DNA of 64,000 nt, from assembly GCF_000002075.1 (NCBI RefSeq), contig NW_004797496.1, positions 969,120 to 1,033,119 on the forward strand. The letters are read 5' to 3'. Source of the stretch: Aplysia californica. Lineage: Eukaryota. The notes under the pieces are model-generated. The model was not told where the DNA came from. It ran no database searches and saw only the letters and a program-made list of their open reading frames with translations. Shown piece after piece: positions 1,224 to 61,000 of the stretch. Position 1 is the stretch's first letter, and each line of letters opens with the position of its first letter. Made by a program: the position numbers and the translations under genes.

Positions 1224-2424
1224 NNNNNNNNNNNNNNNNNNNNNNNNNNNNNNNNNNNNNNNNNNNNNNNNNNNNNNNNNNNNNNNNNNNNNNNNNNNNN
1301 NNNNNNNNNNNNNNNNNNNNNNNNNNNNNNNNNNNNNNNNNNNNNNNNNNNNNNNNNNNNNNNNNNNNNNNNNNNNNNNNNNNNNNNNNNNNNNNNNNNN
1401 NNNNNNNNNNNNNNNNNNNNNNNNNNNNNNNNNNNNNNNNNNNNNNNNNNNNNNNNNNNNNNNNNNNNNNNNNNNNNNNNNNNNNNNNNNNNNNNNNNNN
1501 NNNNNNNNNNNNNNNNNNNNNNNNNNNNNNNNNNNNNNNNNNNNNNNNNNNNNNNNNNNNNNNNNNNNNNNNNNNNNNNNNNNNNNNNNNNNNNNNNNNN
1601 NNNNNNNNNNNNNNNNNNNNNNNNNNNNNNNNNNNNNNNNNNNNNNNNNNNNNNNNNNNNNNNNNNNNNNNNNNNNNNNNNNNNNNNNNNNNNNNNNNNN
1701 NNNNNNNNNNNNNNNNNNNNNNNNNNNNNNNNNNNNNNNNNNNNNNNNNNNNNNNNNNNNNNNNNNNNNNNNNNNNNNNNNNNNNNNNNNNNNNNNNNNN
1801 NNNNNTTAAATATAGTCAGCAAAGAGTCAACTGATAATATTATGTACTTTCCCTTCTGACTTGTGCTCTGAAGAGCAAGAACTTAATAATAATAATAATG
1901 GAAAGTAGTTTGTCAATTCGCATCATTTTCTTATGGGCATGATTTATTTCACACTAATGGAATACACACTTAAGAGAAAATGTGTGTAATATTTTCGGTG
2001 AAATTTTCCAAGACAAACAAAATCAACACTAGAACAAAAATGTTTGCTGCCAGATCATACAAAAAAATAATTTCTTTAAAAAGCTATGGTTTGTGAGCAC
2101 AAATGAAGACTACAGGAAAAAAATGGAAGAGTTGCAATTTTGTGATTCTGAGAAATTTTAGTTCTCAATGTTTAAAATATTAAATCTCAAAAACAAAACA
2201 AAAATTTCTCAGTTTCCTTTTACATCGACCCTGCCATTTTTCTCTCTTTCAAATGTGAGTTGTGAGGCCTCCATGGGGAATAACTCAAAATAACCTTCAA
2301 AATGAGATATGCTGCAGTTTTTTCCCTGTTGTCTGCAGATCCACAGCTTTTTTAAAGTCCTATTTTGGAATGAATATTTTCAGAGCTCTGTGAAGCGCTT
2401 TGAAAAATCCTGAAAAGGAGTTGA

Positions 2425-5400
2425 TCAGCAGCTTCTGCGCGCAGAAGTCTTGTCTGCCTTAGGTACCAGATAGATGTCTTTGGTCAACATGGAGTACAAA
2501 ACAGGGGTCTGTTTCTTGGAGTCCTGGTGTGGCTTCTCTGTGTTCACAGAAACCATGTCTCTGATCATCAGTCCTGTCACAGAGGTCAGTTGTCTCACAA
2601 GGCTTTTGTCTCCCCGGTTCCTGCTCAGGACGTTGTAAAGACAAGTGATGAACCATGACCCTTGATTTTCCCGACGAAAAGCGAAATATCCTGAGAAAAG
2701 AAAAGAGAACACGTTCAGTTATTTGTTGTCATAAGCAATCTGTTCCCCCCCCCTCCCCCACATACACACATGCTCATATGCATTAATACTAATCTTTTAC
2801 TCTCTGTCTCAATGTTGACAGTTAAAAATATTTGTGAGACAGTGTGGTGAAATCAGGCGCTAATCAAAATAATGATACTGAAGAAACCCGCATTTTTATC
2901 GAATTACTGTTTTTTGGCTCAAAAACCTTTTTTGTCCATTTAAAAACACATCTCTGTTTTGACCTTTCTGAAAAACGTTCATTAAAGGCATTAAAAATGC
3001 AAAGTTTTCGTTTCCACGTTCCATGGACTCTCAAGCTATGGAAAGAACCAAACTATGGTGGCCATTTTCTCGTTAATTTTAGCTCTGAAACTAAGTGACA
3101 CCACCTACTTCAATCGCAAATATCTCCACTTGTTTCCAAGATAGAGGAGTATTTGTGTCACGACGCAGTGAAATCAGGCGCTCGTCAACTTATGGGCATG
3201 TGAAGTTATTGCTGTCATCTAAAAGCTTATTCATTTGCCTTGTTTTCAAGGAAAAAAATACCCATCTATCCTGAATAGAGTTGGAGATATTTGCAATTGA
3301 AGGAGGTGGGGTCGCTAGGTTTCAGCGGTAAAATTCGAGAGAAAATGACCCCCAAAGTTCGGAAACTTCAATAGCTTGAGAGTCCTTGAAAACTGAAAAA
3401 TTACATGTTCTGTGCTTTTAATCAACATTTTTCAGTCAAATACACTAGGAAATGTGTTATTATAAGGACAGAAAAGGTGGTGAGCCAAAAAACCAAATTT
3501 CAATAAAAATTGCCAACTGGCGGAAAAATACCTGTTTCTTCGTTTTTATTATTTTGACATGCACCTGATTTCATCACGATGCGTCGCATTTTTTTTCATC
3601 AAAAACAGGACAAACAAGCAATCTTTAATTAAGATGATGCAGCTAACTCCATATGCCCAAAAATTGACGAGCACTTGATTCCACAGCGTCATGACATTCT
3701 TGTTCCCGAGTCATGAGTTGCCCACCTCCTAATTCAAAGGTCTGAACTAGATCAACCAGGGAATAGAATGTTTACTATCACATCAAAATCCAGTTTGCAA
3801 AAGAAATGTTCAGCCAATTTCTGTTCGCCTCGGAAAAAGTGATAGTGGTTGGAGGTTTGCAACTTGTAGGCTCTGCTTATTTACTAATCCTCTATTTTAT
3901 AATGACAATAAAAATAATAATAATAATAATAATAACCACAAAANNNNNNNNNNNNNNNNNNNNNNNNNNNNNNNNNNNNNNNNNNNNNNNNNNNNNNNNN
4001 NNNNNNNNNNNNNNNNNNNNNNNNNNNNNNNNNNNNNNNNNNNNNNNNNNNNNNNNNNNNNNNNNNNNNNNNNNNNNNNNNNNNNGCTTATATCCACAGC
4101 ACACTCTATCCTTTATACAACTATAAGTAAAATGCCAGCAGATCCCAAAACACCACTCTGAAATAGTGTCATTTTCCCAGGGAGCATAATGCAGTGCAAA
4201 CTGCAGATTACATGTCCATGTGCTGAAACATTAACAAACTGACACAACCTTTAATTGTCTATAGCCAGGCACCCATTTCCATGAGGGTGAGGTGAGGAAG
4301 ATTTGCTTCTCAAAGACACAACGTTGGGGCCCTGATAGGATTCAAACTCATGACCTGATGGTTGAGAGTCCGAGAACCGAACCACTAGACCACTGAACCC
4401 ACATCTGTCCATCTTACTCTTTCACTGCATAAAATTACTGTTACTGTGTCAGTGTACTTCTCTTTACTCAGACAAGAGCTGGAGAGAGACCATTGCTCCA
4501 CATTAAACACCTATCACAAGTAGAATTAGAACAAGTCATGATCTTTGGCCTGCAAACACAACACATCCCACTGAATTCCTACCTAAATAGGATCTGCAAG
4601 GATACCCCACCCGACTGCCCGTTGTGCGACTGCCAGGATGAAACAGTATCACACCACCTTTTTACCTGCCCTGTGCTTAGCGACCGGCGTAGTATACCTA
4701 CCTACCTGCCTCCCCAGACATCGGAAATACTCTATACAGCGACAAAACACAGCTGATAAAAACCTGTAAATTTTTTACCATATGAACAGGCCAAAGGGCT
4801 AGAACTAAAATGGCCGCTGGATCGGAAAAGTAAAGTAAAGTAAAGTAAAAGTAAACACCTATCACTCCAACAATTTTTTTCTTCTTTTCAATCCCTTTGC
4901 CACAGGCCAGAGTAAAATCAGAATAGATGTTTCAAGTCAACATGAAAAAAACCCACTCCATTGATCTCTTCAACCTGCCTGCATTTTGATGACTGTTATG
5001 TACAAGGCATATTTTTTTTTTTTCAATCAACGGAGGCCCCTCATCTTTGAAACAACCATATTGTGTTTCTCCAAGATGATATTATGGTTGGATGAAGATT
5101 CTTCTTCTTTACTTTCCCGCTGTTGATTCTGTCTGTCTCTCATGTTTTTATTTTCAGATCATTATTAGCATAATTGAGTTGGTGTGCATCTCTTTACCTA
5201 GCCACAAGACAACCTGAATGGTTTATATACATGATGTATATAAAAATTTCTTTTATTTCTCGTTGGGATTGATTTAGAATGCTGGCCTTGAAGTAGGTCT
5301 AAATTAAATATCAAGACTAGTTCTACCTGGCTGCTCAAAATTTGTGAAGTGATTTTATGTTTGCAACAGCATTTTTATATAGCCTTGTACGTACATACAT

Positions 5401-8400
5401 CAAACATGCTTATTATAGTGAAACACATGCAAATTGAACAGAATTTTAAGTCCCGAAGTCTTCTTATTTGTCTATATATATAATAATATATTCTTTGTAT
5501 TTTATAACAAGTACACAACCAAATTCGTACTTAACAAATAGGTTTCAACATCCCGCCAATTTTGCTTCGTGTAAGCTAAACAGTAATTCTGTTAGTCTGT
5601 CTGCTCGGATGAAGTATCCCTGTCAGCTTGGGTTGGCCCTGACAGGCAAATTCGAAGGAACCCGCCTCCAAAATGATTTAACACTTACAGTACTGTCTGC
5701 AACTCAAGTCACAAGGCTGTAGTATGCGCTTATTTCTACTGGTGATTTTAGTTGCCGATTCGACCAGGCACACTAAATATAATTAAATAACGAATGTATC
5801 CCCTGCACTGAAGTAAATACCAATAAAAGTGTTTCTACGGCTACGCAGGTTTTTTTAGTTTTGAAAAATGGTTTCAGCATTCTAAACTGGTGCATTACTT
5901 GAAGGTATTTCACTATTTGAGCCTTCGGTACTGTAAGTGTTAAATATGTCGATGAGGGCATAAAACACAACAGCTACATATGGTCGCTTTTTAAGACAAG
6001 CCGGCTAACCAAGATTTCGGGGGTTTCCAGAAATCTTGACCAACACCAAAAGTGGGCATTGCCCTACCAATAGGAGAAGTTTGGTTTCATTAGTGCGTAT
6101 ATATGTTTGGTTATAGATTACATAAAGCTCTCCATGTCTTTTAAAGAAACTGAACAAGGGGCAAAAACTTTAACTTCGATTTTCTCAAAACAGCATTTTT
6201 TGGGATAGCTGCCTTGTGTTTAAAAGCGACCATATGTACAACAGGCAGACTTCTCCTTTCAATGTGGTGCAGTACCTGGAGGGGTGGCGTACATCACCAG
6301 AAAGTCCAGGTAACAAGGAGCAGGGCTCGCAACATTCACAAAGCAAGGCTCCCGTTGTACTTCAGAGCGTATTCTTTGGGGTGCAGGGCTCGCAACATTC
6401 ACAAAGCAAGCCTCCCGTCGTACGTCAGTGGGTACCCTTTGGGGTGCGGGGCTCACAACATTCACAAAGCAAGGCTCCCGTCGTACGTCAGTGGGTACTC
6501 TTTGGGGTCTTCAGAAAATGATAAACCATAAAGGTTGATGCACACGGGAATTCTTTCTTCACAGAATGATACATGTATAAAATTATATGCACAAAAATTT
6601 TACAAACTACTGCACAGTAAGATATTGATGAATTAATCTAAATTATACATATATATGGACAATATGGTTGAAACTGTCCAAGATGGAAACCATTTGTTGA
6701 GAAGGAAAGTGGTTGTCTTATACAGGTGGAGGTCTTGGACAGTCGGGTCATTATTATAATATAAGAAAGGTAGAAAATAGAGTCATTATAAAAAAGTGTG
6801 AGATGAAAAATGGGAAGTGGTTGGCAGTCCAGGTGACTGTTTTAGACGGGTGGCCTGTAGATCTACACCTAGCGCAACTTGCACAAAGGGCGTCCGAGAT
6901 TTGTTGCCCTTATCCGAGAAGGCATGGTGTTCGATCTTTCCTACCATAAGATCAGGGGTGTGGCTGAAAGACAGCAGTAAGAAGGAGCCAAGGCGTAGCA
7001 GTAGAAAGGATGCAGAAAGAGCCAAGAGCTTAGAGGAGGGGGCAAAGGAGGTGAGGGGGTGGGGGCAGAAAGTGGAGACAAAAACAGACGACAGAACATT
7101 GTTTATGGGGTGTGAAACATTTACAATTTTACAATTGCATATGGTCTCATTTTTGTTGCTACATCTTTCATCTTTTTTAAATTCAATTTTCTTCTATCTT
7201 TTTATTTTACACATAATATTATATGAATGCCACATAATATATTACACCTGCCAAGCAAGTGTATACTTTTACGCTTTTTTTATTTCACACAATTTTGCCA
7301 AGTATGATTTTTTAAGGTCAATTTTGAGGGACCATATCTTGGGCTGTCTTAGGTGACCTATTAATGTGTCAGATGATGCAGAATTCATTTAGCTTTAAAT
7401 TGGTATGCAGTATGAGTGGTTAGTACAAGGCTTTAACACAATTATTGGGTGAATACATTTTCAAGTTTCTTTTGGACACCACTGTAGTATTAGGACAAAG
7501 ATGAAAAGATAAATAATTTCCTTTGTAAAGACACAAACAATATTCCAGATCAAATGACTTATGTTCGGAGCAACACCTATGAGTCTTTAGTCACGTCTTA
7601 CGGTATCCTGACCAAACATCAGCCTCATTCTTCTTACTGAGGAGGTCTGCACGGCTATTTACCGGCTCTAAATTACCATTATTATGTCAATGTGCTTTCC
7701 TCTACTAAAACCTTCTCAAACTCAAAACAGCAGAGGATTAATCAAGCCGTTAAATCCAAAGAGACATTAAAAATGGTGAAATATTTACAGGCAAAATGAT
7801 TCTTCGTGTTACATCATCTGTAGAGATAATTCAGAAAAAAGAATACCTTCGTTCCTCTTGAGGTCCTTGCCCATTCTTTTCTTCTTCTTCTATCAAACAA
7901 GCGTCAAGAGCATCACGAAGGTGGAGATTGCCCAAAGTTGGAGGTAAATCCTCTGTGGCTAAACGAACAGGTTGCAGCACTGGAAGTTCCATTCCATCAT
8001 CTAAACGAGAACCCCTGCATGCCTAAAGATAAAAGATTATTAAATAAATATTAAGAGCAAATTGCTTCATGTAAGCACATAATATATCTATGATCTAAAA
8101 GGTTTCGATGGAGGCGTAAAAAATTTTCAGGGACATAAAAGGCTTTCATTTCTTTTCATTACTGCCATCAGCAGCAAGTGAAATTTTCTCTAATTAAGAT
8201 AATTAATAAAATTTTCCAGGTTTTACATTGTCATCTCGGCCACTAGTATGTTTTACTCTTGACTGTCCACCTATGTCTTTCCGTCTTCCTTTGTAACTTG
8301 ACTAAATGATTGCTGTGGGTGGCTGGAGGGCACCAGTGGTAGGTCCAACTTTTTTACTATTCCTCTTCAATTTCTCCCTATCTTCTTTTTTTCTCAACAC

Positions 8401-11400
8401 TTTCGTTATGTTCATCTATTATACTTTAAAAAAAAATTTTAATCATAATTTTACAAGCAAGTTGCTGTGATTGACACAGAATGATGTGAGGCACAAGGGC
8501 TAAAGGTGGACAATGCATAATGAGGACTGACAGCATCAAAGTATTGACTGGGCTAGAGGATATAACAAAATGCACCAGAGCAGCTGACGACTGTAAACAA
8601 TGGCAGGCTATTACACGTCATCCGCTGAGCTAGAGACGACACCTCCAGACACAGATTTTAAAAGCAAAATGAGCAAAAACTGAACACAGGTTCAAGAACG
8701 GTAGATAAGCCATTCTCAGTTTGTTGGAAGGAAACTCCACATTCTCTAGAAATGGGTGGTTGGAGGTGCCACTTAAGTACTTCTTTTCTGTCGCTCTGTT
8801 GCTTCAAGCAGCCCGTTTTTCTCTCTTCCTTCTCTTGATGACTGTTATTGTGTTGATGTGTTTCTCTTGACTCAGAGACTATTCCCTTTAATGGAAGATC
8901 CCTTCTCCTCAAAGGTGGATATATACCAAAAGGGAAAATGACTCTTTGTCTTCCTATCTCTTACATTCTTACATTAATTCTATTTCAATTTCTTACAAAC
9001 GTTCAAGTTTAATTTTTTACAATAAAAATGAAAGGATTCCAAATCCCCGTTTTTTCCCCCCTCTATATCTTTTGAATTGCAGCTTACCTTAACACAATAT
9101 AAAGGAATCATGCAGATCTGGTTAACACAAATGAATTTTGGACCATTTCATCATTCCTCTCGGCTGAGTCATCCCCCCCCCCTCAACTCGCTGTTACCTA
9201 TAGTTATCAACACACGTCACACATCACTTGTTCCATACGCTGAAGGGCCAATAACACGATCAGTTAAAACTGACAACTGGTTCATCCTCTTTGTGATAAG
9301 AAAAACTACATATGATGAAATCTAGGTAAAAATACTTCTTTTTTGTGATCTTCTAAATCCAACAAGAAAAAGAGTCACACACGAGTCATTTTGTTAATTT
9401 TGATATGCTGGTTCGGAATTTGATGTTATTTTTACAATAGGATGTAGTCTTCAATAAGTTTACAAACAAAATTTTTATCGTTTGTGGGCCGCAGGCATAG
9501 ACTGTCCGGTCGGCTGGATGCTTTTTTTGCTTCAAGCTGGCAAGCCTTGACAATTAAATTAATAGCAAAAAAACATAAATAAAAGAGAAAGACAAAAGGA
9601 AACCTGAAAAAGAACAACTAATTGGTCTTGGAGTGGGGAGAAAAGGTTTGAGGATTGGACCAGGGGTCTCATTCCAATACTTTTTGAGGACCGATGGCCT
9701 TATTTATACACAATAACGTGTCAAGGTTTGGCAAGCAAGGGCACTGACCTGAATAAAAAACAATTTGGGTTTTCCAATGAGGCTAGGGCAATTTCTGTCT
9801 CTGAATTTTTCCATTATCAGTCTCGTCTCGACTTGTCCATCCCTGGTAGAAATGGTGTCTTCTATTTGATAGCCAGATTGCGTGGCTTCCATCCTAGAGT
9901 TGCCGTGTGAGGAGATGGCCACGACAAGACAGTCGCAGTCAGAGTGATCTTCTCTTGATACTGAATCAAACAACAACTTTGTTAAAGTAGAAACAAAATT
10001 TTTAAAAAACAACAAATAACAATAAAAAACAGCAACAAAAGAACTTCAGAAACTGTATGACAATATAGATGAAAATCTCTTGCAAAAGAAATAAATTTAC
10101 AATGTATGGTGGTAAATTTTTTTAACCTTTGCCTTACTTGGACCTTTTACTTGGGATCAACAATCGTTCTTTCAGAAGACATACAATGAGGAAAGCAGAA
10201 AGTCATAAATGTAGCATACTATTCTTTACTGTGTACTTTTGAGTCACTCTGGAGTTATAGACTATCAGATATCGGGTTATAAGCATACATGAAAAAACAA
10301 ACGGAAAGACAATTGGGATATTTTCCGTCTTTGAAGAAAAAAGTACATCTGTAGAAAAGCTTCTTTTTCCTATTCTATTCAGACGTTGGTGTAGTCTTCA
10401 TACCCTAAATAATATCTATTTTCTTTAAATCACACATAAATCATTTGGTTACTCTTTTAAATTTATCTTTGATTTACGCAATACCAAAGTTTACCATTAT
10501 GAATAAGTTGTAGCAACTCATTCCTGGTCACATCCCGGAAAGTTCGTATTTCAAAATCCAGAGAGGTGAACAACTCTTGAAGTCGCCTGAAGTCCTGCTG
10601 GCTTCCATCTCGTGAGCGTTGTCCTGAGAAGTTATGGTTGACGATGATGATAGCGACACCTCTACGCTCATGTGAGAAGTTGTAATTGTCACTGCTATCC
10701 AACGCTGGTACAGGATTGTCAGAACTTGTAAGAGAAAAAAGAAAAAAGTTGAAAAGGGTTATCCACACATGGAATTGCTTTCAGACTAGATACCACATGC
10801 ATAATTATAATTGCTGAGCAAACAGTATTACTACTCATGTCATTTGTTTGGTATTTCCTTTTTAGATTAGCCGGGTTTGTCCTGTTGTCATTCTTAAGTT
10901 GTGTTTTTATTGCTTAAACTTTCTTCACCAGGCTTACCTTTCTGTCAGTTCATGAGAACACTGCAAGGCAAAATGTCATACATAGGCTACCAAATGACTT
11001 GCTTGGTTGTCAAACAAGAACTCCACATTTTGGTGTATTGAATCTCTTTGCTTTCTTAAAGGAGAAACTTCCCTTTTGAAAGATGTTACGTACGAGCTGA
11101 AGTTTGGTAAGACAGAATATGAAAATTCTGATCAAATTACAATATTATTTAGAAACAAATATGGAGACACACTTTTTAAGTTTGCAAAGCACCTTTCTAG
11201 TAACGAATCTTCCACAACCATAAAAAAACTTAAAAGATGGAATGCATCGGCACTACACTCTCTTTGCAGGGTTGAGTTCCTGGTATCTCCCCTCTATGAT
11301 GTCAAATGGGGGAATGCATTAGACCAAATTCATAGTTGATGAAGTATCAATTCAAATTATATAAAAAATGTTGATATTATTAATATTGTAAGTCTTGAAG

Positions 11401-25500: not shown

Positions 25501-28500
25501 TTCTTATATTTCCTCCTTTGCGTATTTTTTGCTCAATAATGACACTGTGTAAGATGGCCACCTCCCTAATAGGGATACTTTTCTCCTCAACAATGGGTGG
25601 CTGCCTTGGATCGTTTCGACTGTATATCATCTTGAATGACATTTAATAATCTGGTGTTTTCGATATTAAAAATTAAACTGTTAAACGTATGTCAAGGTCT
25701 ATTATTAGTATAAAATTTCGAGAACAGGAGTTGAAGTTCAAGAGAAGTTTAGAAATGGATCATCTTTCCTGAGAAATCTGTTGCCCTCACTAATCCATTG
25801 TTCTGACCTCAATCTGTTCTCATGGTGTTTGTTAAGTGCTCTGGTATGGGCTTCTCCTTCTTTCCTATCAAACATCTAGATCTATTGTTCTTGTTAAATC
25901 TCTCCTCCTTTTTTTATTTTTATGGTACTCTAAAATAACACCCAATCTTCTGCACTTTTATACTTGTGTTTCAAATGTCTTAAAACACTATTTAAAACAA
26001 CAAAAAGATGTCTGGGATGCTGTATCCCTCTCAGCGTGGGTTGACCCTGACAGGTAAGGGTTAGAAGCCCGCCTCCCAAATATTCTAAATTGTGTTGATA
26101 GGGGCATAAAAACATATACATTTAAAGACGAAATTTTTTAATGAATTGATTACTGGTGCTGTCACTAATCTGTTGCTGTCATCACAATTTGTTTCTCCCT
26201 CAGTGTCAAAGGAGGACCACACCCAGAACGACTGTTTTGTTTGTGTGATTCTGAGCCACGGGAAGGAGGGATATGTCTTTGGACAGGACGACAAGGTCCC
26301 CATTGATGAGCTGGTTTTGCCCTTCAAAGGAAACAACTGCCCATCGTTAGGTGGAAAACCCAAGCTCTTTTTTATACAGGTACAGTTGATATGCTTTGTA
26401 TGTTAAATTAATGGTAATGTACTACCTTTCTAAAGAAGAGTTTGTTTGGTGTTTTTTAAATTTTGATTCTAATTCTTTTTTTTAAGGGGAGGGGGGTTAA
26501 TTGAAGTGAGAAGCTGGGGATTTTTTGTGTATGTCTGTGTGTGTGTGTTGAGCGAGTTTGACAAAAAGGATAAATCTGGGTGAGTTTGGTTTTATTTTCA
26601 GTTTTATAAATATTTGATTTGAAATGGACAAATAAGATATCTGGATCATGGAACCATGCTTTGAAAAACTTTGAATTATTCTTCCTTGGCAGTTCTAAAA
26701 TCGAAAACAGTAAGCCTCTCTGCTCTGGCAATACCCAGTTTTCAAAATTAATTCTTACACATAACCAAAGCCACTCTAGTGTGGGTAAATATTGAGACCA
26801 CGCATGGGTTAATATTGAGACCACGCATGGGTTTTTGGGGTCCAGTTTGGGGCCTGACAATGTTTAAGTGTTTTAAGAAACTTCCCTTAACAAATTATAT
26901 GCTGAATCAAATGGAAATACTTCCTATTTCAAAGAGATAGCTCCATAAAGTCTGTTTCATAGCTCCATAAAGTCTGTTTCATTTAATTGTTAGCCAATGC
27001 TTTATTGAAATTTTAAATGCTTTGCACATTTTCTCTAAATGCTCATTTAATGATTTTAAAAGCTAAAAATTAAAAAAATGACATCAAACGTAAAGACGTG
27101 AAATTTAGAGGGTAAGTGCTACTTGTCATTTCAAATAAAGTGACTCTAGCTTTTTTTATGTTTTTCATTATTTTTTTGGGTTGTAATTTTGACTATTTCT
27201 TCTATTTTCTATCTAATATGCTAGTCCTTTAAAAGTGATAAAACTACTTATATACAATTTCAAGAAAAGCTAGTGTTATTTTCTTAGTATCTGTATACTG
27301 ATTATTAATACGTGAGGCATCGTGGTCAAATTCAGGCGCTCGTCAAAATACTGAAATCGAAGAAACTGGCATTTTTCTTCTGGTGTGGCAATTTTTATAC
27401 TCCATATGCTCAAAAATTAATGAACACGTGATTCCACCACGTCATGACACATGTGTAATTATTTCATAGACAGCATGGGTAGTTTGGGGATTTTTAGTTT
27501 TGAAAATGATCCTTCAGATTACGTAGTTTCGCTCTGATATTTGCAATTTTAATGATTACTTAACTGAGAATGATTCTCAAAACTGAATATATTTTTTTAT
27601 ATTTGAATGGAATACTTTGTAAAAAATGAGAGAAAAACGGGAAAAAATCATTCATTTGTAGATTTTGGTACCAAGAAGTAGTGTGCGGCATTAACAGTAC
27701 CTTTGAAAATGACAAGTGGCTGCCTGTCAGACGGGATGATTTAACGCTCTATGCAGAGATAAAAGGGAGGGGGGGGAGCTCTCGTGGCCTAGAGTTAAGG
27801 TGTTGACCTCTCATTCAAAGGTCCCAGGTTCGAATACGGATAGCGACCGAAAAATTTTCTTCTCTACAGTGATCTCCTTTCATCTCCTTTCTTGCTCTCT
27901 AGCAATGTTCTGTCGTCTGCCTTTGTCTCCTCTTTCTGCCCCCACCCCCTCACCTCCTTTGCCCCCTTCTCAATAGTGCACTGTACTGTCCTCTTGGCAG
28001 GCTTGTCGAGGAACTGACCTGGATTCTGGGGTAGAGGTGAGCGACGCCGCTCCGGATGAGGAGGAAAGCATGGAGGAGGAGGTGGTCATGCGGAGGATCC
28101 CAACGGAAGCTGATTTCCTCATGGCTTATTCTGTTGTTCCAGGTGAGACTTTTATGTTCTCATGGCTTATTGTGATGTTCCAGGTGAGACCTTTTTGTTC
28201 TCATGGCTTATTCTGTTGTTCCAGGTGAGACTAACTGGTGCCCAATGAAATAAAAAAAGAACTTCGGAGAAACATGAAACCCCGAAAGGCATAAACTATA
28301 CTACAGTGGCTGAGAAGACCGCCATGAATATGGAGTTGGAATATTCATTCATAAAAAACTGAATGCCGTTCAGGGTTGCCGACTAGTTTCCTGTCGACTC
28401 ATCGCCATACACTTGAAAGCATCACCATTCAATATCACTGTCATTCAAGCATATGCACTAACAGCAGAACATGATGATGAAGAAGTGGAGGAATTCTTCT

Positions 28501-31500
28501 TCCTACTCCAAGAAGTACTGGGCGAAACACCAAAAAAGGATAGGTGGTACAAGGCCACTAAAATTCTAAGATTGGGGAAGATGGAGCGAAAGACTGGGAA
28601 GGAAGCTGCGGACCCTACTGCAATACCAACACCAATACATAAGGCATCAAGGAGATGGACGTGGTGCTGCCCAAGTGGAGATTTACGTTACATCAGATAG
28701 ACTACATCATGGGCAAGCGTCGCTTTCAAAGCAGTGTCAACATTGCCAAGACCAGAAGTTTTCCAGGAGCAGACGTTGGCAATGATCACAACCTTGTCAT
28801 AATGACATTCTCACTTCGTCTTAAAAAGTGCAGGAAACAAGGAATCACCCAGATCAAGTTCAACCTTGAAAGACTCAAAGACCCAACCATATAAAAATAT
28901 TTTCAAACTAACTTAGGAGGAAAGTTTGCTCCACTCCTAGCGCTAAATCAAGATGATACAGAAGTTGACTCCCTTACAAACACTTTCAACACCGTCATGA
29001 CAGAAACAGAAAATCAGCTCCTGTGGAAACATTGCGTGAAAAGAAGCCCTGGGTCACAGATGACATCCTTGACCTATGTGAGAACAAGAAAAGGGAACCA
29101 GAAGGTGCAAAAGAATACAGAGACGAATCTGCACGTGAAAAGGGGAATGAGAGGAGCTAAGGAGAAGTGGATTGAAGAATAGTGTGAAGAAATAAAAAAT
29201 AGAAGACAGCTTGAATCAAAACAACAGTAAAAAGGCTTACCTATCATCAAAGATCTCACAAGTACCAAACTAGGGTGGACCACTTCAATACAAAGTAAAG
29301 AAAGGAAATGTCTAACGGAGGAACAAGAAGTTCAGAACCGGTGGACAGAATATTGCTCTGAACTGTACTCCCACAAAACCACAGGAGATCCAAGAGTGCT
29401 CAATGTCTCCCAATCACAAGATAATAACAAAAGCAATATCTTAAGAGAAGAGATAGTAGCAGCAGTCTCATCACGGAAGAAAGGGAAATCAGTTGGAATA
29501 GACAACATCACAGCAGAAATAGTCCAAGCAGGTGGAGACTCTGTGATAGACTTGCTATGGATAATCTGCAACAAGATCTGGCAGACAGGCGAATGGCCAA
29601 CCCAATGGACTCAATCCTTGATCATCGCCCTTCCCAAGAAAGGCAATTTTCAACAATGCCAAAACTATCTTGACTGTTAGCCTGATTAGCCATCCTAGTA
29701 AAGTAATGCTTAAAGTCATTCTCAACAGACTGAAACCACATACAGAGAAAATCATAGCAAAAGAACAGGCAGGCTTCAGGACAGGGCGCAGCTCTGCTGA
29801 ACAAATATTCAACCTGAGAATCATCATGGAAAAGTACTTCCATCACCTGCAGGAGCTTCTCCAAGTATTTGTGGACTTCAAAAAAGCTTTTGAGAGAGTA
29901 TGGCAGGAAGCTTTGTGGGCAACCATGAACTTATACAATATCAACACCAACCTGATCAAAGTCATAGAAAAGCTGTACTTCAAAGCTACGAGCGCAGTCT
30001 TTTTCAACAACTTTGGGGAATGGTTCCAAACAACAGTGGAAGTGCGCCAGTGTTATCTGCTCTCACCTACTCTTTTTAACATTTTCTTGGGGAAGATCAT
30101 GACAGATGTTCTTGGAGATCACGAAGGAACAGTCAGTGGGGGCAAAACGATTAATAACTTACGTTTTGCAGACGACATAGACAGCCTTGCGGGACAAGAG
30201 CAAGAATTGGTCAGCTTGGTAGACCGTCTTGAAAAGACCTCCGCAGCCTACAGCATGTAAATCAACACTGAGAAGACCAAACTGATGTCTAACAGCTACA
30301 GGAACATCACAGTGGACATCCAGGTCAACAACCTGAGGCTTGAGACCGTACGCAGCTGCTTCAAATACCGGAGTGCAATAGTGACTGATGAAGGATCAAA
30401 GCGAGAAATAATCTCCTGAATAGTGCGTACTTCAGCCACAATGACCAAGTTGAAAACCATCTGGAATGACAGAAATATCACCGTCAGATCAAAGATCAGA
30501 CTGATGTATTCCTTGGTCATGTCAGTATTTTTGTATGCATGTGAATCCTGGACCTTGAATGCCAACCTTGAAAGAAGGATCATAGCTGTGGAGATGAGAT
30601 TTTTCCTAAAAATCCTTGGTATCTCGTACAAAGATCACATCACAAATGATTAAGTTAAACAACGGATCAAAAATGAAATTGGTCCATATTCTGACCTTCT
30701 CACTTTGGTCAGGAAACACAAAATGCAATGGTATGAACACATCACCTGTTCATCCAGCCTTGCCAAGATGATCCTGCAAGGCAGCGTCCAGGGAAAAAGG
30801 AGCAGAAGCAGACCGAAGAAAAGTTGGGAGAACAACATCAAGGAATGGACAGGCCTGGAATTCAAAGACACGCTCAGGAAAGCTGAAGACCGGAAGGAGT
30901 GGAGGAAGCTGGTGGCCAACTCTTCAGAAGCGCCTCGATTGACATCCAGTCTATGGGATAGGTGAAGGTGAATAAGAACACTGTCCAAGATGATGTTGAC
31001 CTGTCTACCACAACTATTTTTCTTCACGAGCATGGATGGCTGCCTTGGACAATTTCGCTTGCATTTGATGTTTCAAGCAAATACCCTTCTTCAACACAGC
31101 TTGTACTACTTGTAGCTTAGACAATTTATTTGATGAAATTATAAAGTTCTGTTGCCAGTTCTGAAAACAAAAGACTGACTCTGATCTACAGTTTAAGCCA
31201 ACTACTCCACATTTTTTCATGCATGCGAAAGTATCTACCATTTTCTTTTTCTTTGCCTACTTCATTAGGAGTCCCTTTGATAGTCCTGTCCTTCTTCTTA
31301 CTTTATACTTACTGACTTTTTACTTTTTCATCCTCTGTTGCCGTAAAGCGTCGAGGGGAGATGCAGTTTTCTTTGGTAGGCCAGCTCCACAGCTCTTTCA
31401 GTTGTGATGTTATGTTTTCTTAGGGTTTCTTACTTTATAATTGTCGCTATTATTGAAGCCTAAGTTATCTTGCCTGCTCCTTTTCTGTGTGAGAAAGTTA

Positions 31501-50100: not shown

Positions 50101-53080
50101 GGAAGACCATTGCCCCACCCACAGAGCAGGCGCCCACGTAGATGGCCAGGCGGTTCAGACTGGGGATATTACCCACAATGCCTCCTACAATCCCTCCCAC
50201 AAACTCCCCCAGCCCGAAGAGTGTGAGCATGAGAGAGGCCTCCATCTTGGAGTGTCCCACCGATCGGAAGAACTCGGGGCCGAAAGCGATGTAGATGGCA
50301 GCACCCGCGTTCCACAGCACATTGCTGAAAAAATATAATGGTACTTTTTAACAGACAGTAAGTCGAGCACATCATAAATATTTAAAACACCCGAACTGCA
50401 TAATTTGGTGATATGAGCGCGCGGGACACATTTAACATTTTCAGTTGGTAGGAAATTTTGAATTTTGCCCGGGTGGCAACTGAAGCCCAGTCTTATAGAT
50501 TTTAGAACAAAACCATGGGATTTTTAACATACGCAACTTGCACTAGGGACCTCCGAGATTTTTCGCCCTTGTCCAAGAAGGCTAGGTGTAGATCTTTCCT
50601 ACCAGAAGATCAGGAGAGTGGCTGAAAGACAGCAGTAAGAAGGGGCAAAGGAGGTAAAGGGGTGGGGGCAAAAAGTTGAGACGAAAGCAGACGACAGAAC
50701 ATTGCTAGAGGGCAGTAAAGGAGGGGAAAGGAGACAATTTTAGAGACCAAATTTTTCCGTGGCAACCCGTATTCAAACCCAGGACCTTTGAATGAGATTT
50801 TATTTATTGCAACTGCACAAGTTCATACATAACAAATAACAGTTGTAACTCACTGCCAACCAACACCACATACACTGCGGTCAAAGTTCCGTTTCAACTG
50901 CCTACATCCGCTGCAGCCCCTGAAGTTTCGGAGTTCAGAATTTATAAACTGCAGTATTACAACAGGTATTATATTAATGACTCAAGTCATTTACTTGAGT
51001 CACAATGATTTTTTAAAAAACACATTGACATGGTTGGCACACAGGGATAGCAATAAGAAATATGATATGAAGGAAGTGAGTTAATATCATGAGAAAGCTA
51101 TTTTAACTGGAAATCTGCTCATTATGTAAAAATTACTCTTTATGTAAAATGTACAAGTTTTCTTTAACTCATTCGCTACATATTATTTTCTGCTTGCGTA
51201 CGAATTTTTTTCGGAAAGGCGAAATGAGATGATGACTAGTGCGCAGTTCAAAGGTCTTCGGGGCCACAAATTCAAATAAATATTAACATATTATGCACCG
51301 AAATTTTCAGTATGATTTGTAGAATACATCTGTAACGTTTGTTTGTGTATTTTTCAACTTTGGTTCCTGTAAGAGGCGATTATGCAACACAATTTTTCTT
51401 GGATGCGGATAAAATTTGAAAATAAAAAATTAATCATCTTCGGTGAAACTCAAAAAATATGTTTACACCTAGTCAAATGATACATAAAAATCACCATAAA
51501 TGAATAGAGAACTGGAAAATATTGAAAAATTTGCAGTTATTTATATACATTCCATAAAATTTGCACATTTAGATCTTGACATCCGATATTGAAAAAAAAA
51601 ATTAAAAATTTTATAATCTTGAAAAATGGACAAGATGCCTTCACAAACAGAAAAAAACCACTTGTGTCGTGTATGGAATTATTCAGAACCGTATTTGTAA
51701 TAAACCTACACATGTCTTGAGTGGTACTTTTTGTGTAATTTCACAAAAATATTGATTTTTGGGAGAATAAAATAATATGACAGTTTAGATCTAGATCTAG
51801 CACTGAAAAATAATGATTCCTCAATAACAGAACAGTGGCAATTTGAGCCCATTTGTATCAGTATTCTAAAGAAGAGTCCTACATTTCTTTGGTGTGCAAA
51901 ATAATGATGTATTTTGTTGTGAAAAGGGTGTAAGACTGGTGTGTGGGCTATAATTTGAACATCGCGATAAAACAAAGTCGCATACACTTCGAAATCGTGT
52001 TTCAAAACTGAATCAAAACTTCCGATTTTTGGTGGAAAAACGCTTGAACAGGAAGTCAACATTATATATGACCTTTATTTTAACATGGATATATGGATTG
52101 GAATAGAATCTAAGCTAAAATTGAGGATCGGTTCTCGAGCCGCCGGGGGCGGCTTAGCGTACTGACGACACTTTAGCCGCGCCGCCCCCCACGGCTCGGC
52201 GTAGCGAATGAGGAATGAGTTAAAGCTGGTTACGGGAAGCTATGGCATAAACATAAACAAACAAAATACCTGACAAAATAGACGTTGAAGCCTAAGTCAC
52301 AACACAGGCAATACTCTTGTTTTATTCTTTGAGCTTTCGTAAGTTTCTGAAAAGTCAATCAAAATTGAAAGCAAAATGAGACAAGAGCATCACATTTCCA
52401 TTAGTAATGGAAAACAATCTCACAACACCTATAAGACAGGTGTTTACTAGACTGTCTTTGATCAAAATGCACTCACCCATGCTCAAAAATAGGACAGTGT
52501 GATGTAATAAACAGCAACAGGTTGTTTGTTTGAAGTAAGTAGTTGACTTGTTCTTTACCTTTCATGAATAATAATATGATTTTGTCTTATTTGTATGCCT
52601 TCGTAAACACCTCACTATTGAAAGATTAAAAGTTTTTTCGGTTTTTTTAGTAGAGGTTTTACGGCGCTCGCAATTGCATAAGGTCATCTGAGCGTCAAGG
52701 GGTGGATGTCAACAGAGAAGTCCTGACAGGGAATCAGACTTACTGTGCTCACCTCTCTAGCTTCAACAGCACAAGGTCTGCTTTGCTTTGACTATCAAGG
52801 CACCTCGGAAATAGTGGAACAAGAGTGTGACCAACATACAAAACAAATAGAGGCAAAATGTCGATAGTAAGGATTAAAAAAGAAAAAGCAGCAGTTCCCT
52901 GTTGCAGTTTAGGCATAGTTATGAGCATGACATTGATGAATCAGCCCATTTAAAATAACAATTCCACTGAGCACAAGAACTCAAGATGTTAATGTCCCCC
53001 CTTTGGGATTGGCTTAAAGACACTTCAGTCAGTAGCACCGCCCCGCGGGGGTTAAAGATTGAAAGTAAAGGAATACGACC

Positions 53081-58015: not shown

Positions 58016-61000
58016 TGTTCTGGTCAGTCGCTTAAAACCACAGCTCAGAACAGCTAGCTCAGCGGAGAATCACTGAAGTCATAAAGAGAGAATAAAAGGG
58101 AACCAAAATAACACATATATATGGAGTTGTTGGTGTCAATTTAAAGCTTGTTTGGGTATATGTTTTGTTTTTGATGAAAAAATAAATACCCATCTATGAT
58201 GTTGAATAGAAGTCAAGATATTTGCAACTGAAGAAGGTTGGGGTCGCTAGGGTGTCAAGGGTAAATTTAATTAGCAACAAAAGGGCAGCTCTCACTAGAA
58301 TCCCCCAGATTTTTTTTAGGTCAGGGGGGGATCCACACATGAAGTATTTAATTAAGTTACAATTTGGGTACAAACAGCAAAATATCTGAAAATGAGACAG
58401 GTCCATATAAATCTGCCTTATTATTTCTTGAGTACATGAAACTGACCACATTAAAGAAACTGGAATTTTATTTAATTCAAAATTTTTGTTTAAATTAGTT
58501 TAACACCAGGCCAAGGATAACATATAATAATCATTACTTGGGGAAATTGCCTATATTCATAATATTACTTTGGGAGTGGGCTCTCATAGAGTAGATGTAT
58601 CGCCATGGTGTTTGCCTCTCATTCAATAGAGGTTCGAAACTTGACATGAGAGACTTGAGTGACAGAAAAATTTTCTTCTCTAAAACATTTTCTCCGAATT
58701 CACCTTTCCTGCTCTCTAATCATCATGTTCTGTCATATATGTTTTCGTCTCCACCTTCTGCCTCTTCCTCCCCTCCCCCCCCTCCACCACCCTTCTTTGC
58801 CCCCTCCCCTGGGCTCCTGTATTATACTCTTTCTGATCTGCCTTTCAACTGATGCTACTCCGTGGCTCCTACATTTTTTACTGCTTGCTGTCTTTCAGCC
58901 ACACCTCTTACGGTAGGTAGAATCAAACACCAAGCCTTCTCAGATAACTTAGGCGAAAAAATCTCAGTCGAGGTCCCAAGTGCAAGTTGGGCACGAGATC
59001 CCTTTGGTGGTCATAGAATCGCTGTAGGCTTCGGCCGCCATTCGCGTAAAATTCAGCAGACGAAGTCCAAACTGGCTTACTCTGCTCACCTCTCTAGCCT
59101 CCACAGCACAAAAAAGCCTGCTCAACTATCATTCAAGGAACCCCGGAAATAGCAGTTCAGAAGAGAGTGACATACATGACATACAATAGAAATAGAAATA
59201 GAGGTAAAATGACGATAGTAAGGATTCAAGGGAAAAAAAAAGCACTTTCCCCCTATGTTGTTCCGGCATTGATAAATCAGCCCATACAGTCCTACCTGCT
59301 GTGCATAAAAACATGTTGATATCCTCTCTTTGGGAAAGGCCTATTTTGACAACTTCAGTCAGTAGCACAGCCCTGGGCAGTGGGGGGATTCATCTGCTGA
59401 GTATCAACGTACAACAACGCTACCCCTCTGACCGCCAACATAAAATTGCAGCCTCGAGATTAACCTACGCTACGGTTTGCAAAAATTAAGATTCAAGAGG
59501 AGAATAAGGTGTCTAATCCCTTCATTAAATTTGAAAAAAAACGTGCATACCGAGAGCGGTAACGATAACGGTAGTGGTGTCAATATATAATAAGGTAGAT
59601 CTACTTACTTAACTTTATAACCCGCTAAACTAACCCAGTTACACAAGAAAAGAAGGCTAAAAGTAAGGCGTCAACGAAATTTGCACGCTCGCACCTAAAA
59701 TCTACACATTCAAAAAACTCTTTTGGCTAGATTTAGATCTAGATCTAGATCTAGATCTATATCAGATTCTAATCATACTCAAATTTTGGGATTAAAGTGG
59801 CGATCCAACTGCACCATCGGCCATATCTACAGGTGTACAGACCACACAACAACAAGGTGTTTCACGGTATTGTTTACAAAAATTAATATTATCAAAACCT
59901 TGACCCTGATATTAGTGACATACTTTTCCTTTCGAAATGAAGTAATACTACTTTCCGGAATGACACAAATAGGTATATGTACAATTTTAAGCTGACACAA
60001 TATAATTATAACAAGCAAACTGCTATTTAGAATCTAGGAGCGATGAAAACAAAATATCAAAGGCCAAAAACTGCTATTGACACTCAATGAAAGTACTAGA
60101 TCTAGATCTAGATCTAGACTAGTGATAGATCTAGCTTCATCAATACAAAAGGTAGGTCTAACGTTAAAAACCTAAGAGCTATTAAAACAATAAATTACAA
60201 TAGGCTAAACCCTTTTGAACAAGGACGTAAAGTCATTGCCCAGTGTGCATCTTAATCTTATATTGTACTTAATTTCGGTGCACTGTATCGGTAATTGCAG
60301 TTTATGAAGATAATGTCAATATTCAGTTTTATTATATCAATGCGTAACGGTATTTAGTTTTGTTCTCTGTGTGTCTGTTTCCGGTGTAAACAAGCGTCCA
60401 TAGAAACAAGTTGTGCGAGTTGACCAACAATCAAGATTTTACTTTGCTATCAAAGGAGCTACATGGCCAATGTCTTTGGCGTATATTATCGCGGGCTTAT
60501 AACTGTGTTCAGCTGTTTTCATTCGATAAAACAAAAGCAAATGATTTGTCAGCTCTGCAACTGATGTAACGACTACTGCAAAGTGTTCGCTCCACACGCT
60601 CTGATCTATTATACCAAGGCCTACTTTACTTCTAGTCTGCTTGTACTTGTAAGCCAACAATCTCGCTTAAAAGTCGATCAAATTTTACCAAATTTCACTC
60701 ATATAACAAACATAGTAAGGAGTCTTAAAATCCACAATTAAGTTTGAGGAAAGTGTTCCGTTTCCATGGCTACAGTGGCCATATATATTGGATTTTATTG
60801 ATTTTATGTAGTGAAACCACACTTATTTTAAATTGAAATGTATTGTTTGTTTGTTTTTTGCCTGCATTTTACCAAACCTTAGACCTACAAATTTATCAGT
60901 TGATTTTTTTTCTTCTAAAGAAGTTAAAAGTAAGATTTTTAATGAATTTTTTTCCAGAAGTAGATTTAGAATCTAGTCAAGTTTGCAGATAATCCAATGA

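What the first reader, a model, noticed from the sequence alone, without database searches (positions are those of the whole stretch)
6276..8022. Caspase A intersubunit linker expanded to about 124 aa with a triplicated 21-aa module
Seen: there are about 124 residues between the catalytic Cys and the small-subunit DFL motif in A, versus 35 in B. The linker has DALD|A, an acidic EEEE patch, and three in-frame 63-bp units PQR(VPTD/IRSE)V(R/Q)RE(P/A)CFVNV(V/A)SPA. The last unit runs straight into PCYLDFL, aligning with PTEADFL of B. Established: linker cleavage and L2/L2' loop rearrangement govern caspase activation, and a long linker lets caspase-9 be active without cleavage. Inference: each unit adds a candidate cleavage site (VPTD), a Cys and an SP kinase site. 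This could be a tunable, possibly copy-number-polymorphic activation switch, or allow cleavage-independent activity.
Basis: partly seen in the sequence, partly recalled or inferred. Interest (0 to 1): 0.75.

Follow-up and report, generated by a model that had tools for sequence, protein, structure and literature searches.

The report
Triplicated linker module in sea-hare caspase
A sea-hare cell-death protease carries a real three-fold repeat inside an unusually long linker between its two halves, but long linkers of this kind are already described in mollusc caspases, so the repeat is a small new detail.

Summary
Exon 6508-6276 (minus strand) holds three in-frame 63-bp units (TRF 6320-6508, 91% matches, no indels). 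They are followed by PCYLDFL. The catalytic Cys and DFL are 124 residues apart, against 35 in the neighbouring caspase B.

The gene is the public model XP_005099862.1, "caspase-3 [Aplysia californica]", 400 aa, which uses the same exons. An RNA-like run shows units 3, 2 and part of 1 as one contig, and shows the splice 6276->2690. The upstream splice 7847->6508 was not seen in reads.

The long linker is not special to this gene. Eight other heterobranch relatives have linkers of 63-104 aa, and six caenogastropod relatives have 38-43 aa. Wang et al. 2024 (PMC11543851) already describe bivalve and gastropod caspase-3/6/7 with long linkers (63-286 aa) that inhibit activation.

Only the triplication looks new. 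It adds 42 aa by copying a module that is single-copy in the other heterobranchs. AlphaFold2 predicts low confidence for units 1 and 2.

Copy-number polymorphism and cleavage-independent activity have no support. I rate it a new member of a known kind, of modest interest.

The parts
13177..13203 (-). Caspase A exon 1 (start codon, residues 1-9 of XP_005099862.1). Boundaries are approximate.
   Evidence: tblastn of P0001 on the window gives 100% identity.
11711..11770 (-). Caspase A exon 2 (residues about 10-29). Boundaries are approximate.
   Evidence: tblastn gives 100% identity.
10495..10724 (-). Caspase A exon 3, start of the p20 subunit (residues 30-105).
   Evidence: Pfam PF00656 positions 1-56, E 2.3e-10. 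Splice sites were read. tblastn agrees.
9749..9960 (-). Caspase A exon 4, the p20 core with the catalytic His (SSHG), up to KPKLFFIQ.
   Evidence: Pfam PF00656 positions 52-128, E 2.3e-13. Splice sites were read.
7847..8022 (-). Caspase A exon 5: ACRG (catalytic Cys178) and the first 57 linker residues, including DALD216|A217 (codons 7914-7903) and the EEEE patch.
   Evidence: The donor AAG|GTATTC is the only consensus-like GT in the open frame.
6509..7846 (-). Intron inside the linker (1338 bp). It carries a high-copy dispersed element at about 6793-7174.
   Evidence: It is an intron in the RefSeq model. Summed DNA word depth there reaches about 495,000, against about 20 for unique sequence. 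Copies of the element were found by blastn elsewhere in the window.
6276..6508 (-). Caspase A exon 6: three 63-bp units followed by PCYLDFLVMYATPPG (start of p10).
   Evidence: The donor at 6276 and its splice to 2690 are seen in RNA-like contig 9 of run X15, with GT..AG on the minus strand.
6446..6508 (-). Repeat unit 1 (PQRVPTDVRREPCFVNVVSPA). VPTD242 is encoded at 6498-6487.
6383..6445 (-). Repeat unit 2 (PQRVPTDVRREACFVNVASPA). VPTD263 is encoded at 6435-6424.
   Evidence: Fully covered by X15 contig 13.
6320..6382 (-). Repeat unit 3 (PQRIRSEVQREPCFVNVASPA). This copy abuts p10 and matches the single-copy module of other heterobranchs.
   Evidence: pLDDT rises to 64-75 here.
2425..2690 (-). 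Caspase A exon 7: the rest of p10 (YFAFRRENQGSWF...) and the TGA stop at 2427-2425.
   Evidence: Pfam PF00656 positions 169-233, E 3.9e-09. Best solved relative is caspase-7 p11, E 8.2e-10. X15 contig 9 covers 2400-2689.
28001..28142 (+). Caspase B single exon ACRG...DFLMAYSVVPG, with a 35-residue linker (the comparator).

Best explanation
Caspase A is the Aplysia californica protein XP_005099862.1. It is an effector-type caspase (no CARD or DED, closest to caspase-3/7). It belongs to the heterobranch branch of the mollusc effector caspases that carry a long, disordered inter-subunit linker.

Shown here:
- The linker has 124 residues between Cys178 and Asp303.
- It has a conserved L2 stub (RGSRLDDG).
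- It has a DxxD|A site (DALD216|A217) that aligns with a column found in 14 of the 15 gastropod full-length sequences aligned.
- It has an acidic patch.
- Its C-terminal module (...T-D-V/G-R/K..., a hydrophobic stretch, then SPA before PCY-x-DFL) is single-copy in the other heterobranchs aligned. In the Aplysia gene it is present three times, through two rounds of in-frame 63-bp tandem duplication. Units 1 and 2 are the most alike (93.7%). Unit 3, next to p10, keeps the ancestral position.

Inferred:
- As in the oyster long-linker caspase studied by Wang et al. 2024, the linker restrains zymogen activation.
- Activation goes through cleavage at Asp216.
- The two extra units lengthen the N-terminal tail of the small subunit (L2') from about 44 to 86 residues.
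- They add two further Asp sites (VPTD242, VPTD263) at which that tail could be trimmed.
- The most likely net effect of the triplication is a small quantitative change in activation, or none. It looks like a snapshot of how these linkers grow, not a new switch.
For: Identity:
- The exon-6 peptide found P0001 at 100% identity over 77 of 77 residues (E 8.3e-42) among 1.84 billion representatives. P0001 is named caspase-3 [Aplysia californica]. It maps at 100% to most of the window's seven exon segments; the two tblastn rows below 100% (94.7% and 93.8%) extend past exon boundaries.
- Pfam PF00656 hits exons 3, 4 and 7.
- The small subunit is closest to caspase-7 and caspase-3 chains.
- His124, Cys178 and Arg318 fall in invariant columns of a 101-sequence alignment.

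Clade-wide long linker:
- In a 47-row tree, A lies in a starred (SH-aLRT 96) 14-row clade with heterobranch sequences. The caenogastropod group is its sister.
- Linker lengths are 124 for A, 63-104 for the 8 other heterobranch rows and 38-43 for the 6 caenogastropod rows.
- Without its two extra units, A would have 82 residues.
- Among 107 of 122 stored proteins with both motifs, the median Cys-to-GSWF distance is 56, and 22 exceed 65. Apart from one insect (Diamesa), these are gastropods.

Conserved site and module: alignment A1 and the Asp-site list.

Disorder: AlphaFold2 gives pLDDT below 50 for residues 206-279, while the caspase core is above 90.

Expression and reality of the repeat:
- In run X15, unique intron bins have depth 0.
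- The exons have depth about 35-42.
- A contig joins 6276 to 2690.
- A contig spans units 3-2-1.

Published function of long linkers: PMC11543851 (abstract, passages and Discussion read).
Against: - The junction 7847->6508 was not seen in any read or contig here. X15 shows no depth over 7748-8100 (the tool warns that such holes prove nothing), and the two raw poly-A RNA runs have only about one or two reads on the gene. Use of exon 5 together with exon 6 therefore rests on the RefSeq model, frame logic and homology.
- Seven AG acceptors fit the phase of donor 7847, two of them inside each unit, so shorter isoforms are possible.
- X15 contigs break inside the repeat at about 6478, 6352 and 6326, although all 203 31-mers of the exon are distinct. 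Some sequence variation in that sample is unexplained.
- No close relative (another sea hare) is in the databases. The next best hit has 41% identity, so the age of the triplication cannot be set.
- Whether A's clade is the same cluster as that of Wang et al. could not be checked, because the supplements are closed.
- Li et al. 2016, as cited in PMC7836458, is said to have found the long linker needed for maximal DEVDase activity. The direction of the linker's effect may therefore differ between genes.
- Wang et al. themselves caution that linker similarity between genes is low.
Confidence: 0.72

Rival explanations
1. One reading: the repeat array is a tunable, copy-number-polymorphic activation switch, or it lets the zymogen be active without cleavage as in caspase-9.
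For: - Each of units 1 and 2 carries VPTD, and every unit carries a Cys and an S-P.
- 63-bp units that are 94% alike are a substrate for unequal exchange.
- X15 contigs break inside the array, and the summed depth there is higher than the two listed contigs explain.
- Linker phosphorylation regulates an oyster relative (PMC11543851).
Against: - No variant copy number was seen. X15 matches the reference through units 3-2-1, and 19 of 20 holder runs share the same word fraction of 0.73.
- There is no CARD or other recruitment domain.
- In the oyster, the long linker inhibits activation and does not permit activity (PMC11543851).
- Units 1 and 2 are predicted disordered.
- Unit 3 has lost the Asp.
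Confidence: 0.1
2. The units are partly removed at the RNA level. The AGs repeated in each unit act as alternative 3' splice sites, so that isoforms with one, two or three units coexist.
For: With donor 7847, exon starts at 6508, 6499, 6451, 6436, 6388, 6373 and 6325 all keep the frame, and each has 12-13 pyrimidines in the 20 nt upstream. The junction 7847->6508 was not directly seen.
Against: - X15 contig 13 runs uninterrupted across 6451, 6436, 6388 and 6373, so a form that keeps at least part of unit 1 plus units 2 and 3 exists.
- The RefSeq model uses 6508.
- Only 6508 follows a T-rich tract.
Confidence: 0.12
3. Caspase A is a decaying paralogue, and the repeat is junk accumulating in a gene that is losing function.
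For: - A has an end branch of 0.76, among the longer ones in its clade.
- The position of the vertebrate IETD/IQAD-type site holds MELP (the vertebrate motifs are recalled).
- There are almost no reads in two poly-A RNA runs.
Against: - The 400-codon frame over seven exons is intact.
- His124, Cys178 and Arg318 fall in invariant columns.
- The DxxD|A site is conserved.
- The core is modelled confidently.
- The gene is expressed and spliced in X15.
- The repeat has stayed in frame without indels.
Confidence: 0.05
4. The three units are an assembly artefact.
For: Tandem repeats are prone to misassembly, and the assembly dates from short-read or Sanger times (the runs are from 2011-2013).
Against: An independent 2022 run gives a single 153-nt contig across unit 3, unit 2 and part of unit 1 with one mismatch. 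All 31-mers of the exon are unique, so the array assembles unambiguously.
Confidence: 0.01

Closest known systems
Mollusc caspase-3/6/7 with long inter-subunit linker (Wang et al. 2024, Commun Biol, PMC11543851; e.g. oyster CgCASP3/6/7-like6)
   Same: - It is an effector caspase without a recruitment domain.
- Its linker is far above the under-60 aa stated there for other animals (124 aa here; 63-286 aa there).
- It is found in Gastropoda and Bivalvia.
- Linker sequences are poorly conserved between genes.
- The gene sits next to a paralogue.
   Different: - Aplysia is not mentioned in the main text, and the word 'repeat' does not occur there.
- Here part of the length comes from a recent 3 x 63-bp tandem duplication of the module next to p10.
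- The linker is split by an intron, whereas that paper proposes intra-exonic insertions.
- The active site is QACRG, not QACRS.
- No Thr260-type AKT site was identified here.
- Function in Aplysia is untested.
Heterobranch caspase-3-like proteins (Biomphalaria pfeifferi P0010, Lymnaea stagnalis P0007 and P0008, Candidula P0006, Arion P0009, Elysia P0016, Plakobranchus P0025 and P0031)
   Same: They fall in the same starred clade. They share the DxxD|A site (a gap in Elysia), linkers of 63-104 aa, and the same ...PAPCY-x-DFLVMYATPPGYFAFRR transition into p10.
   Different: Identity is only 37-42%. Each has the pre-PCY module once, whereas Aplysia has it three times.
Vertebrate caspase-3 and caspase-7
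   Same: The fold and catalytic residues match. They are the best solved-structure relatives of the small subunit (caspase-7 E 8.2e-10). They are thought to be activated by cleavage within the linker (established knowledge).
   Different: The vertebrate linker is roughly 30 residues (recalled), with the site about 12 residues after the Cys (recalled). Here the corresponding position has no Asp, and the candidate site lies 38 residues after the Cys.
Caspase-9
   Different: Caspase-9 has a CARD and is activated on the apoptosome. Caspase A has no CARD and groups with effector caspases.

Membership tests
Caspase (peptidase family C14A) | Caspase domain with p20 and p10 parts | tested here: met
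   PF00656 hits exons 3, 4 and 7, covering profile positions 1-56, 52-128 and 169-233. The AlphaFold2 core has pLDDT above 90.
Caspase (peptidase family C14A) | Catalytic His (SHG) and Cys (QACRG) | tested here: met
   His124 and Cys178 fall in invariant columns of 101 aligned caspases. The motifs SSHG and QACRG were read.
Effector caspases (caspase-3/6/7 type) | Short N-terminal segment without CARD or DED | tested here: met
   The precomputed Pfam for P0001 is PF00656 only. The first strand of the fold starts at residue 49.
Effector caspases (caspase-3/6/7 type) | Closest sequence relatives are caspase-3 and caspase-7 | tested here: met
   The best PDB hits of exon 7 are caspase-7 and then caspase-3 chains. 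Database names of the relatives are caspase-3-like or caspase-7-like.
Effector caspases (caspase-3/6/7 type) | DEVD-type substrate preference | not testable with these tools
   This needs an enzyme assay.
Mollusc long-linker caspase-3/6/7 (Wang et al. 2024) | Inter-subunit linker longer than about 60 aa | tested here: met
   There are 124 residues between Cys178 and Asp303. The paper's domain boundaries differ from mine, so the numbers are not strictly comparable.
Mollusc long-linker caspase-3/6/7 (Wang et al. 2024) | Membership of the published Bivalvia and Gastropoda cluster | tested here: inconclusive
   In my tree, A groups with heterobranch long-linker sequences (SH-aLRT 96). A second gastropod long-linker clade, which includes the Aplysia 'caspase-7' P0043, is separate. 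The paper's sequence list is in supplements that are closed, so I cannot say which clade(s) it covers.
Mollusc long-linker caspase-3/6/7 (Wang et al. 2024) | The linker inhibits cleavage activation and is regulated by phosphorylation | not testable with these tools
   This needs deletion and phospho-site mutants.
Caspase-9-like initiators | CARD prodomain | tested here: not met
   No CARD: PF00656 is the only family on record.

The most novel reading that the evidence does not exclude
The array acts as a length rheostat for zymogen restraint. Because every unit carries AGs in the phase of donor 7847, and because 94%-identical units invite unequal exchange, animals or tissues could make caspase A with one, two or three modules. 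Each module would add an Asp site (in units 1 and 2) and lengthen the tail that follows the conserved DxxD|A cut. That cut would also expose an Ala-first neo-N-terminus (ACLI here; AVME, ALPS, APPH, ASPV, AVRV and APEL in relatives). These resemble IAP-binding motifs (recalled from caspase-9 ATPF and Smac AVPI), which would tie long-linker caspases to the expanded mollusc IAP family.
Probability: 0.08. Interest if true: 0.55.

Novelty: new member of a known kind. Interest (0 to 1): 0.3.

Why it matters
The finding gives a concrete, datable example of how the long linkers of mollusc effector caspases grow: by in-frame tandem duplication of the module next to the small subunit. It also shows that in Aplysia these linkers are interrupted by introns.

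It places the sea hare, a neurobiology model, within the published long-linker class. It points to DALD216|A217 as the likely activation site for anyone studying caspase action in Aplysia neurons.

It does not open a new kind of regulation. If the units proved to vary in number or to be alternatively spliced, the gene would be a convenient natural series for testing how linker length sets the activation threshold.

Tried and rejected
- **Module in another gene or mobile element.** I looked for the unit elsewhere in the genome. By DNA, 1 of 1 match is the locus itself. By protein, only the locus scores below E 0.3. Rejected.
- **Relatives of the module in 1.84 billion representatives.** Three hits came back. 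Besides P0001, the other two (P0002, P0003) are unrelated tandem-repeat ORFs. I take them as repeat-against-repeat chance matches.
- **Transcript-derived protein fragments.** I used the 77-aa exon peptide as query, which limits candidates to 42-135 aa. There were 684 candidates and none at E <= 0.001. The whole-protein search (candidates 220-700 aa) found no second Aplysia copy, and the next hit is 41% identical. The protein collections therefore gave no transcript evidence for the 7847->6508 junction. Fragments of 135-220 aa were not covered, and I ran no further search on them.
- **Raw poly-A RNA runs X21 and X22.** They have almost no reads on the gene, so no junction counts were obtained.
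- **Fork at the exon 6 boundary.** I asked whether the X15 contig end at 6478 marks a spliced/unspliced fork or an internal acceptor. The positions do not fit 6508, 6499 or 6474, so this stays unexplained.
- **Literature.** Three searches combined 'caspase' with: 'intersubunit linker' and 'mollusc'; 'long intersubunit linker' and 'oyster', at least 2 of 3 terms required; 'tandem repeat', 'linker' and 'gastropod' (1 paper, irrelevant). A fourth used 'Aplysia', 'caspase-3' and 'caspase-7' (16 papers; none of the 15 listed titles is about Aplysia caspase structure). I found no description of a repeated linker module. PMC3923871 has no occurrence of 'linker'. Li et al. 2016 was seen only as a citation in PMC7836458.
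- **Not attempted.** No fold search was run, because sequence evidence already settles the family.
Full report
**What is in the sequence.**

On the minus strand the window carries a seven-exon caspase gene.
- The exon with the active-site motif runs 8022-7847. It reads ACRGSRLDDGMELPVLQPVRLATEDLPPTLGNLHLRDALDACLIEEEEKNGQGPQEER and ends in phase 2 at AAG|GTATTC.
- The next exon, 6508-6276, starts after TTTTCTGAAG, with an in-frame TGA just upstream. It reads three 21-residue units followed by PCYLDFLVMYATPP.
- Tandem Repeats Finder reports period 63, 3.0 copies, 6320-6508, 91% matches and no indels.
- Units 1 and 2 differ at 4 of 63 bases. Each differs from unit 3 at 8 of 63.
- The array occurs once in the 927-Mb genome, both by DNA and by protein.
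- The distance from the catalytic Cys to the Asp of DFL is 124 residues.
- In the neighbouring, divergently oriented caspase B, the same stretch is one exon with 35 residues.

The only correction is that the donor lies at 7847.

**Identity of the gene.**

That joined step is left out.
- The exon-6 peptide, searched against 1.84 billion representative proteins, returned a 400-aa protein identical over all 77 residues.
- Its sources name it XP_005099862.1, caspase-3 [Aplysia californica].
- It maps back to the window at seven segments: 13203-13177, 11770-11711, 10724-10495, 9960-9749, 8022-7847, 6508-6276 and 2690-2425. Identity is 100%, apart from two tblastn rows that run past exon boundaries.
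- Pfam's caspase domain hits exons 3, 4 and 7.
- The small-subunit exon is closest to caspase-7 and caspase-3 among solved structures.
- His124, Cys178 and Arg318 fall in invariant columns of a 101-sequence alignment.
- No CARD or DED is on record.

**Transcript evidence.**

- Of 24 runs listed for the exon, 20 from 8 studies hold at least half of its 22 sampled words. Two are guessed DNA, nine guessed RNA and nine unknown.
- I laid four runs on 2400-8100.
- Run X15 behaves as RNA. Unique intron bins have depth 0, while the last exon has depth 34.6 and exon 6 has about 42.
  - A 1053-nt contig joins 6276 to 2690 with GT..AG on the minus strand.
  - A 153-nt contig covers 6326-6478 with one mismatch, so unit 3, all of unit 2 and half of unit 1 are contiguous in that sample.
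- Against this, X15 shows nothing over 7748-8100. The tool warns that conserved genes can be filtered and that a hole proves nothing.
- The two raw poly-A runs have only about one or two reads on the gene.
- The junction 7847->6508 was therefore not seen. It rests on three things: the RefSeq model; the fact that 7847 is the only consensus-like donor before the stop; and frame compatibility.
- That same enumeration shows seven phase-compatible AGs, two inside each unit. Shorter isoforms cannot be excluded.
- The X15 contigs also break at about 6478, 6352 and 6326, although all 203 31-mers of the exon are unique.

**Comparison with relatives.**

- A whole-protein search with the public model gave 414 hits at E <= 1e-10. 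The nearest are heterobranch gastropods at 37-41% identity, and there is no second sea hare.
- Among 107 of 122 stored proteins with both QACxG and GSWF-type motifs, the median Cys-to-GSWF distance is 56. Twenty-two exceed 65, and apart from one insect (Diamesa) these are gastropods.
- In a 47-row tree (quick IQ-TREE, linker columns mostly dropped by the 60% fill filter), A lies in a starred 14-row clade.
  - That clade includes Candidula, Arion, Biomphalaria pfeifferi, two Lymnaea, Elysia and two Plakobranchus sequences.
  - It also includes a long-branched bivalve group that I do not trust.
  - The caenogastropod group (Pomacea, Littorina, Nucella, Babylonia and two Logan proteins) is its sister.
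- Linker lengths are 63-104 in the eight other heterobranch rows and 38-43 in the six caenogastropod rows.
- A second gastropod clade, which contains the Aplysia 'caspase-7' P0043, also has long linkers. Its Aplysia gene has the linker spread over three exons.
- The long linker is thus an old, clade-wide trait. Without its two extra units, A would have 82 residues, which is within the range of its relatives.

**Anatomy of the linker.**

- The RG-x-x-LD-x-G stub after the Cys is conserved.
- A column DxxD followed by Ala or Gly is present in 14 of the 15 full-length rows of the alignment. It reads DEVD|A/G in four of the six caenogastropod rows plus DTVD|A in a fifth. In heterobranchs it reads DMSD|A, DDAD|A, DDTD|A, DTLD|A, DTID|A and DQAD|V, and in Aplysia DALD|A.
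- I take this to be the activation site. This is an inference from conservation and from the established rule that caspases cut after Asp.
- The transition into p10, ...(V/I)-x-(S/H/P)-P-A-P-C-Y/F-x-D-F-L-V-M-Y-A-T-P-P-G, is conserved across the gastropod rows.
- Upstream of that transition, the other heterobranchs have one stretch resembling the Aplysia unit: TTDGKK... in Lymnaea, TTGGRK... in Arion and TPTD... in Biomphalaria.
- The unit is thus the C-terminal, best-conserved part of the linker, copied twice more in Aplysia.
- AlphaFold2, with the 101-row alignment, models the core at pLDDT above 90. Residues 206-279 fall below 50. Confidence rises through unit 3 to 64-75. This fits unit 3 as the copy that keeps the structural role, with units 1-2 as disordered additions.

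**Literature.**

- Wang et al. 2024 (PMC11543851; abstract, passages from Results and the whole Discussion read) report several points.
  - These linkers are poorly similar to each other.
  - In one oyster member, deleting the linker increased self-cleavage and DEVDase activity, and phosphorylation of a linker Thr by AKT suppressed heat-induced activation.
  - Aplysia and the word 'repeat' do not occur in the main text. The supplements are closed.
- Vogeler et al. 2021 (PMC7836458, passages read) state that a long linker is found in many bivalve caspase-3/7 members. They cite Li et al. 2016 for its being needed for maximal DEVDase activity. I saw Li et al. only as that citation.
- Three further searches found nothing on repeated linker modules or on Aplysia caspase structure.

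**Verdict.**

The feature is real, expressed at least in part, and correctly read. It is a member of an already described class. The new element is a lineage-specific triplication of the module next to the small subunit.

The mechanism I commit to has three parts:
- a disordered linker that restrains activation;
- a cut at Asp216;
- extra units that lengthen, and perhaps allow trimming of, the small subunit's N-terminal tail, with a small or no functional effect.

The caspase-9 analogy fails on domain architecture and runs against the oyster data.

Noticed in passing
window 7033-7101 and 27903-27971; also 50532-50704 and 58725-58992: A piece of a high-copy dispersed element lies in the linker intron of caspase A. 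Summed DNA word depth there reaches about 495,000, against about 20 for unique sequence. At 94% identity over 69 nt, the same piece also lies directly upstream of the ACRG exon of caspase B, in the same orientation relative to each gene.
   Followed up: partly
window 28118-28231: In caspase B, the end of the ACRG...VVPG exon with its GTGAGA donor is repeated three times in tandem (seen).
   Followed up: no
G000:C24:90375-100341 (loci L005-L009): The Aplysia 'caspase-7' (P0043, 448 aa) is a second long-linker caspase. Its linker region (residues about 242-379) is matched by three separate genomic segments, so the linker there is also split by introns.
   Followed up: partly
window 28413-30260: Plus-strand ORFs with reverse-transcriptase-like sequence (...FADDIDSLAG...) lie downstream of the caspase B ACRG exon, probably a retrotransposon in its intron. 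The motif assignment is from recall.
   Followed up: no
window 6325-6479: RNA-like contigs of run X15 end at about 6478, 6352 and 6326, although every 31-mer of the exon is unique in the reference. The summed depth in 6220-6410 (50.1) exceeds what the two listed contigs give. This may reflect SNPs or a variant array in that sample.
   Followed up: partly
P0001 residue 217 and aligned positions in P0006-P0012: The residues after the conserved DxxD cut begin with Ala (ACLI, ASPV, ALPS, APPH, AVRV, AVME, APEL). They resemble IAP-binding motifs as I recall them. This is untested.
   Followed up: no
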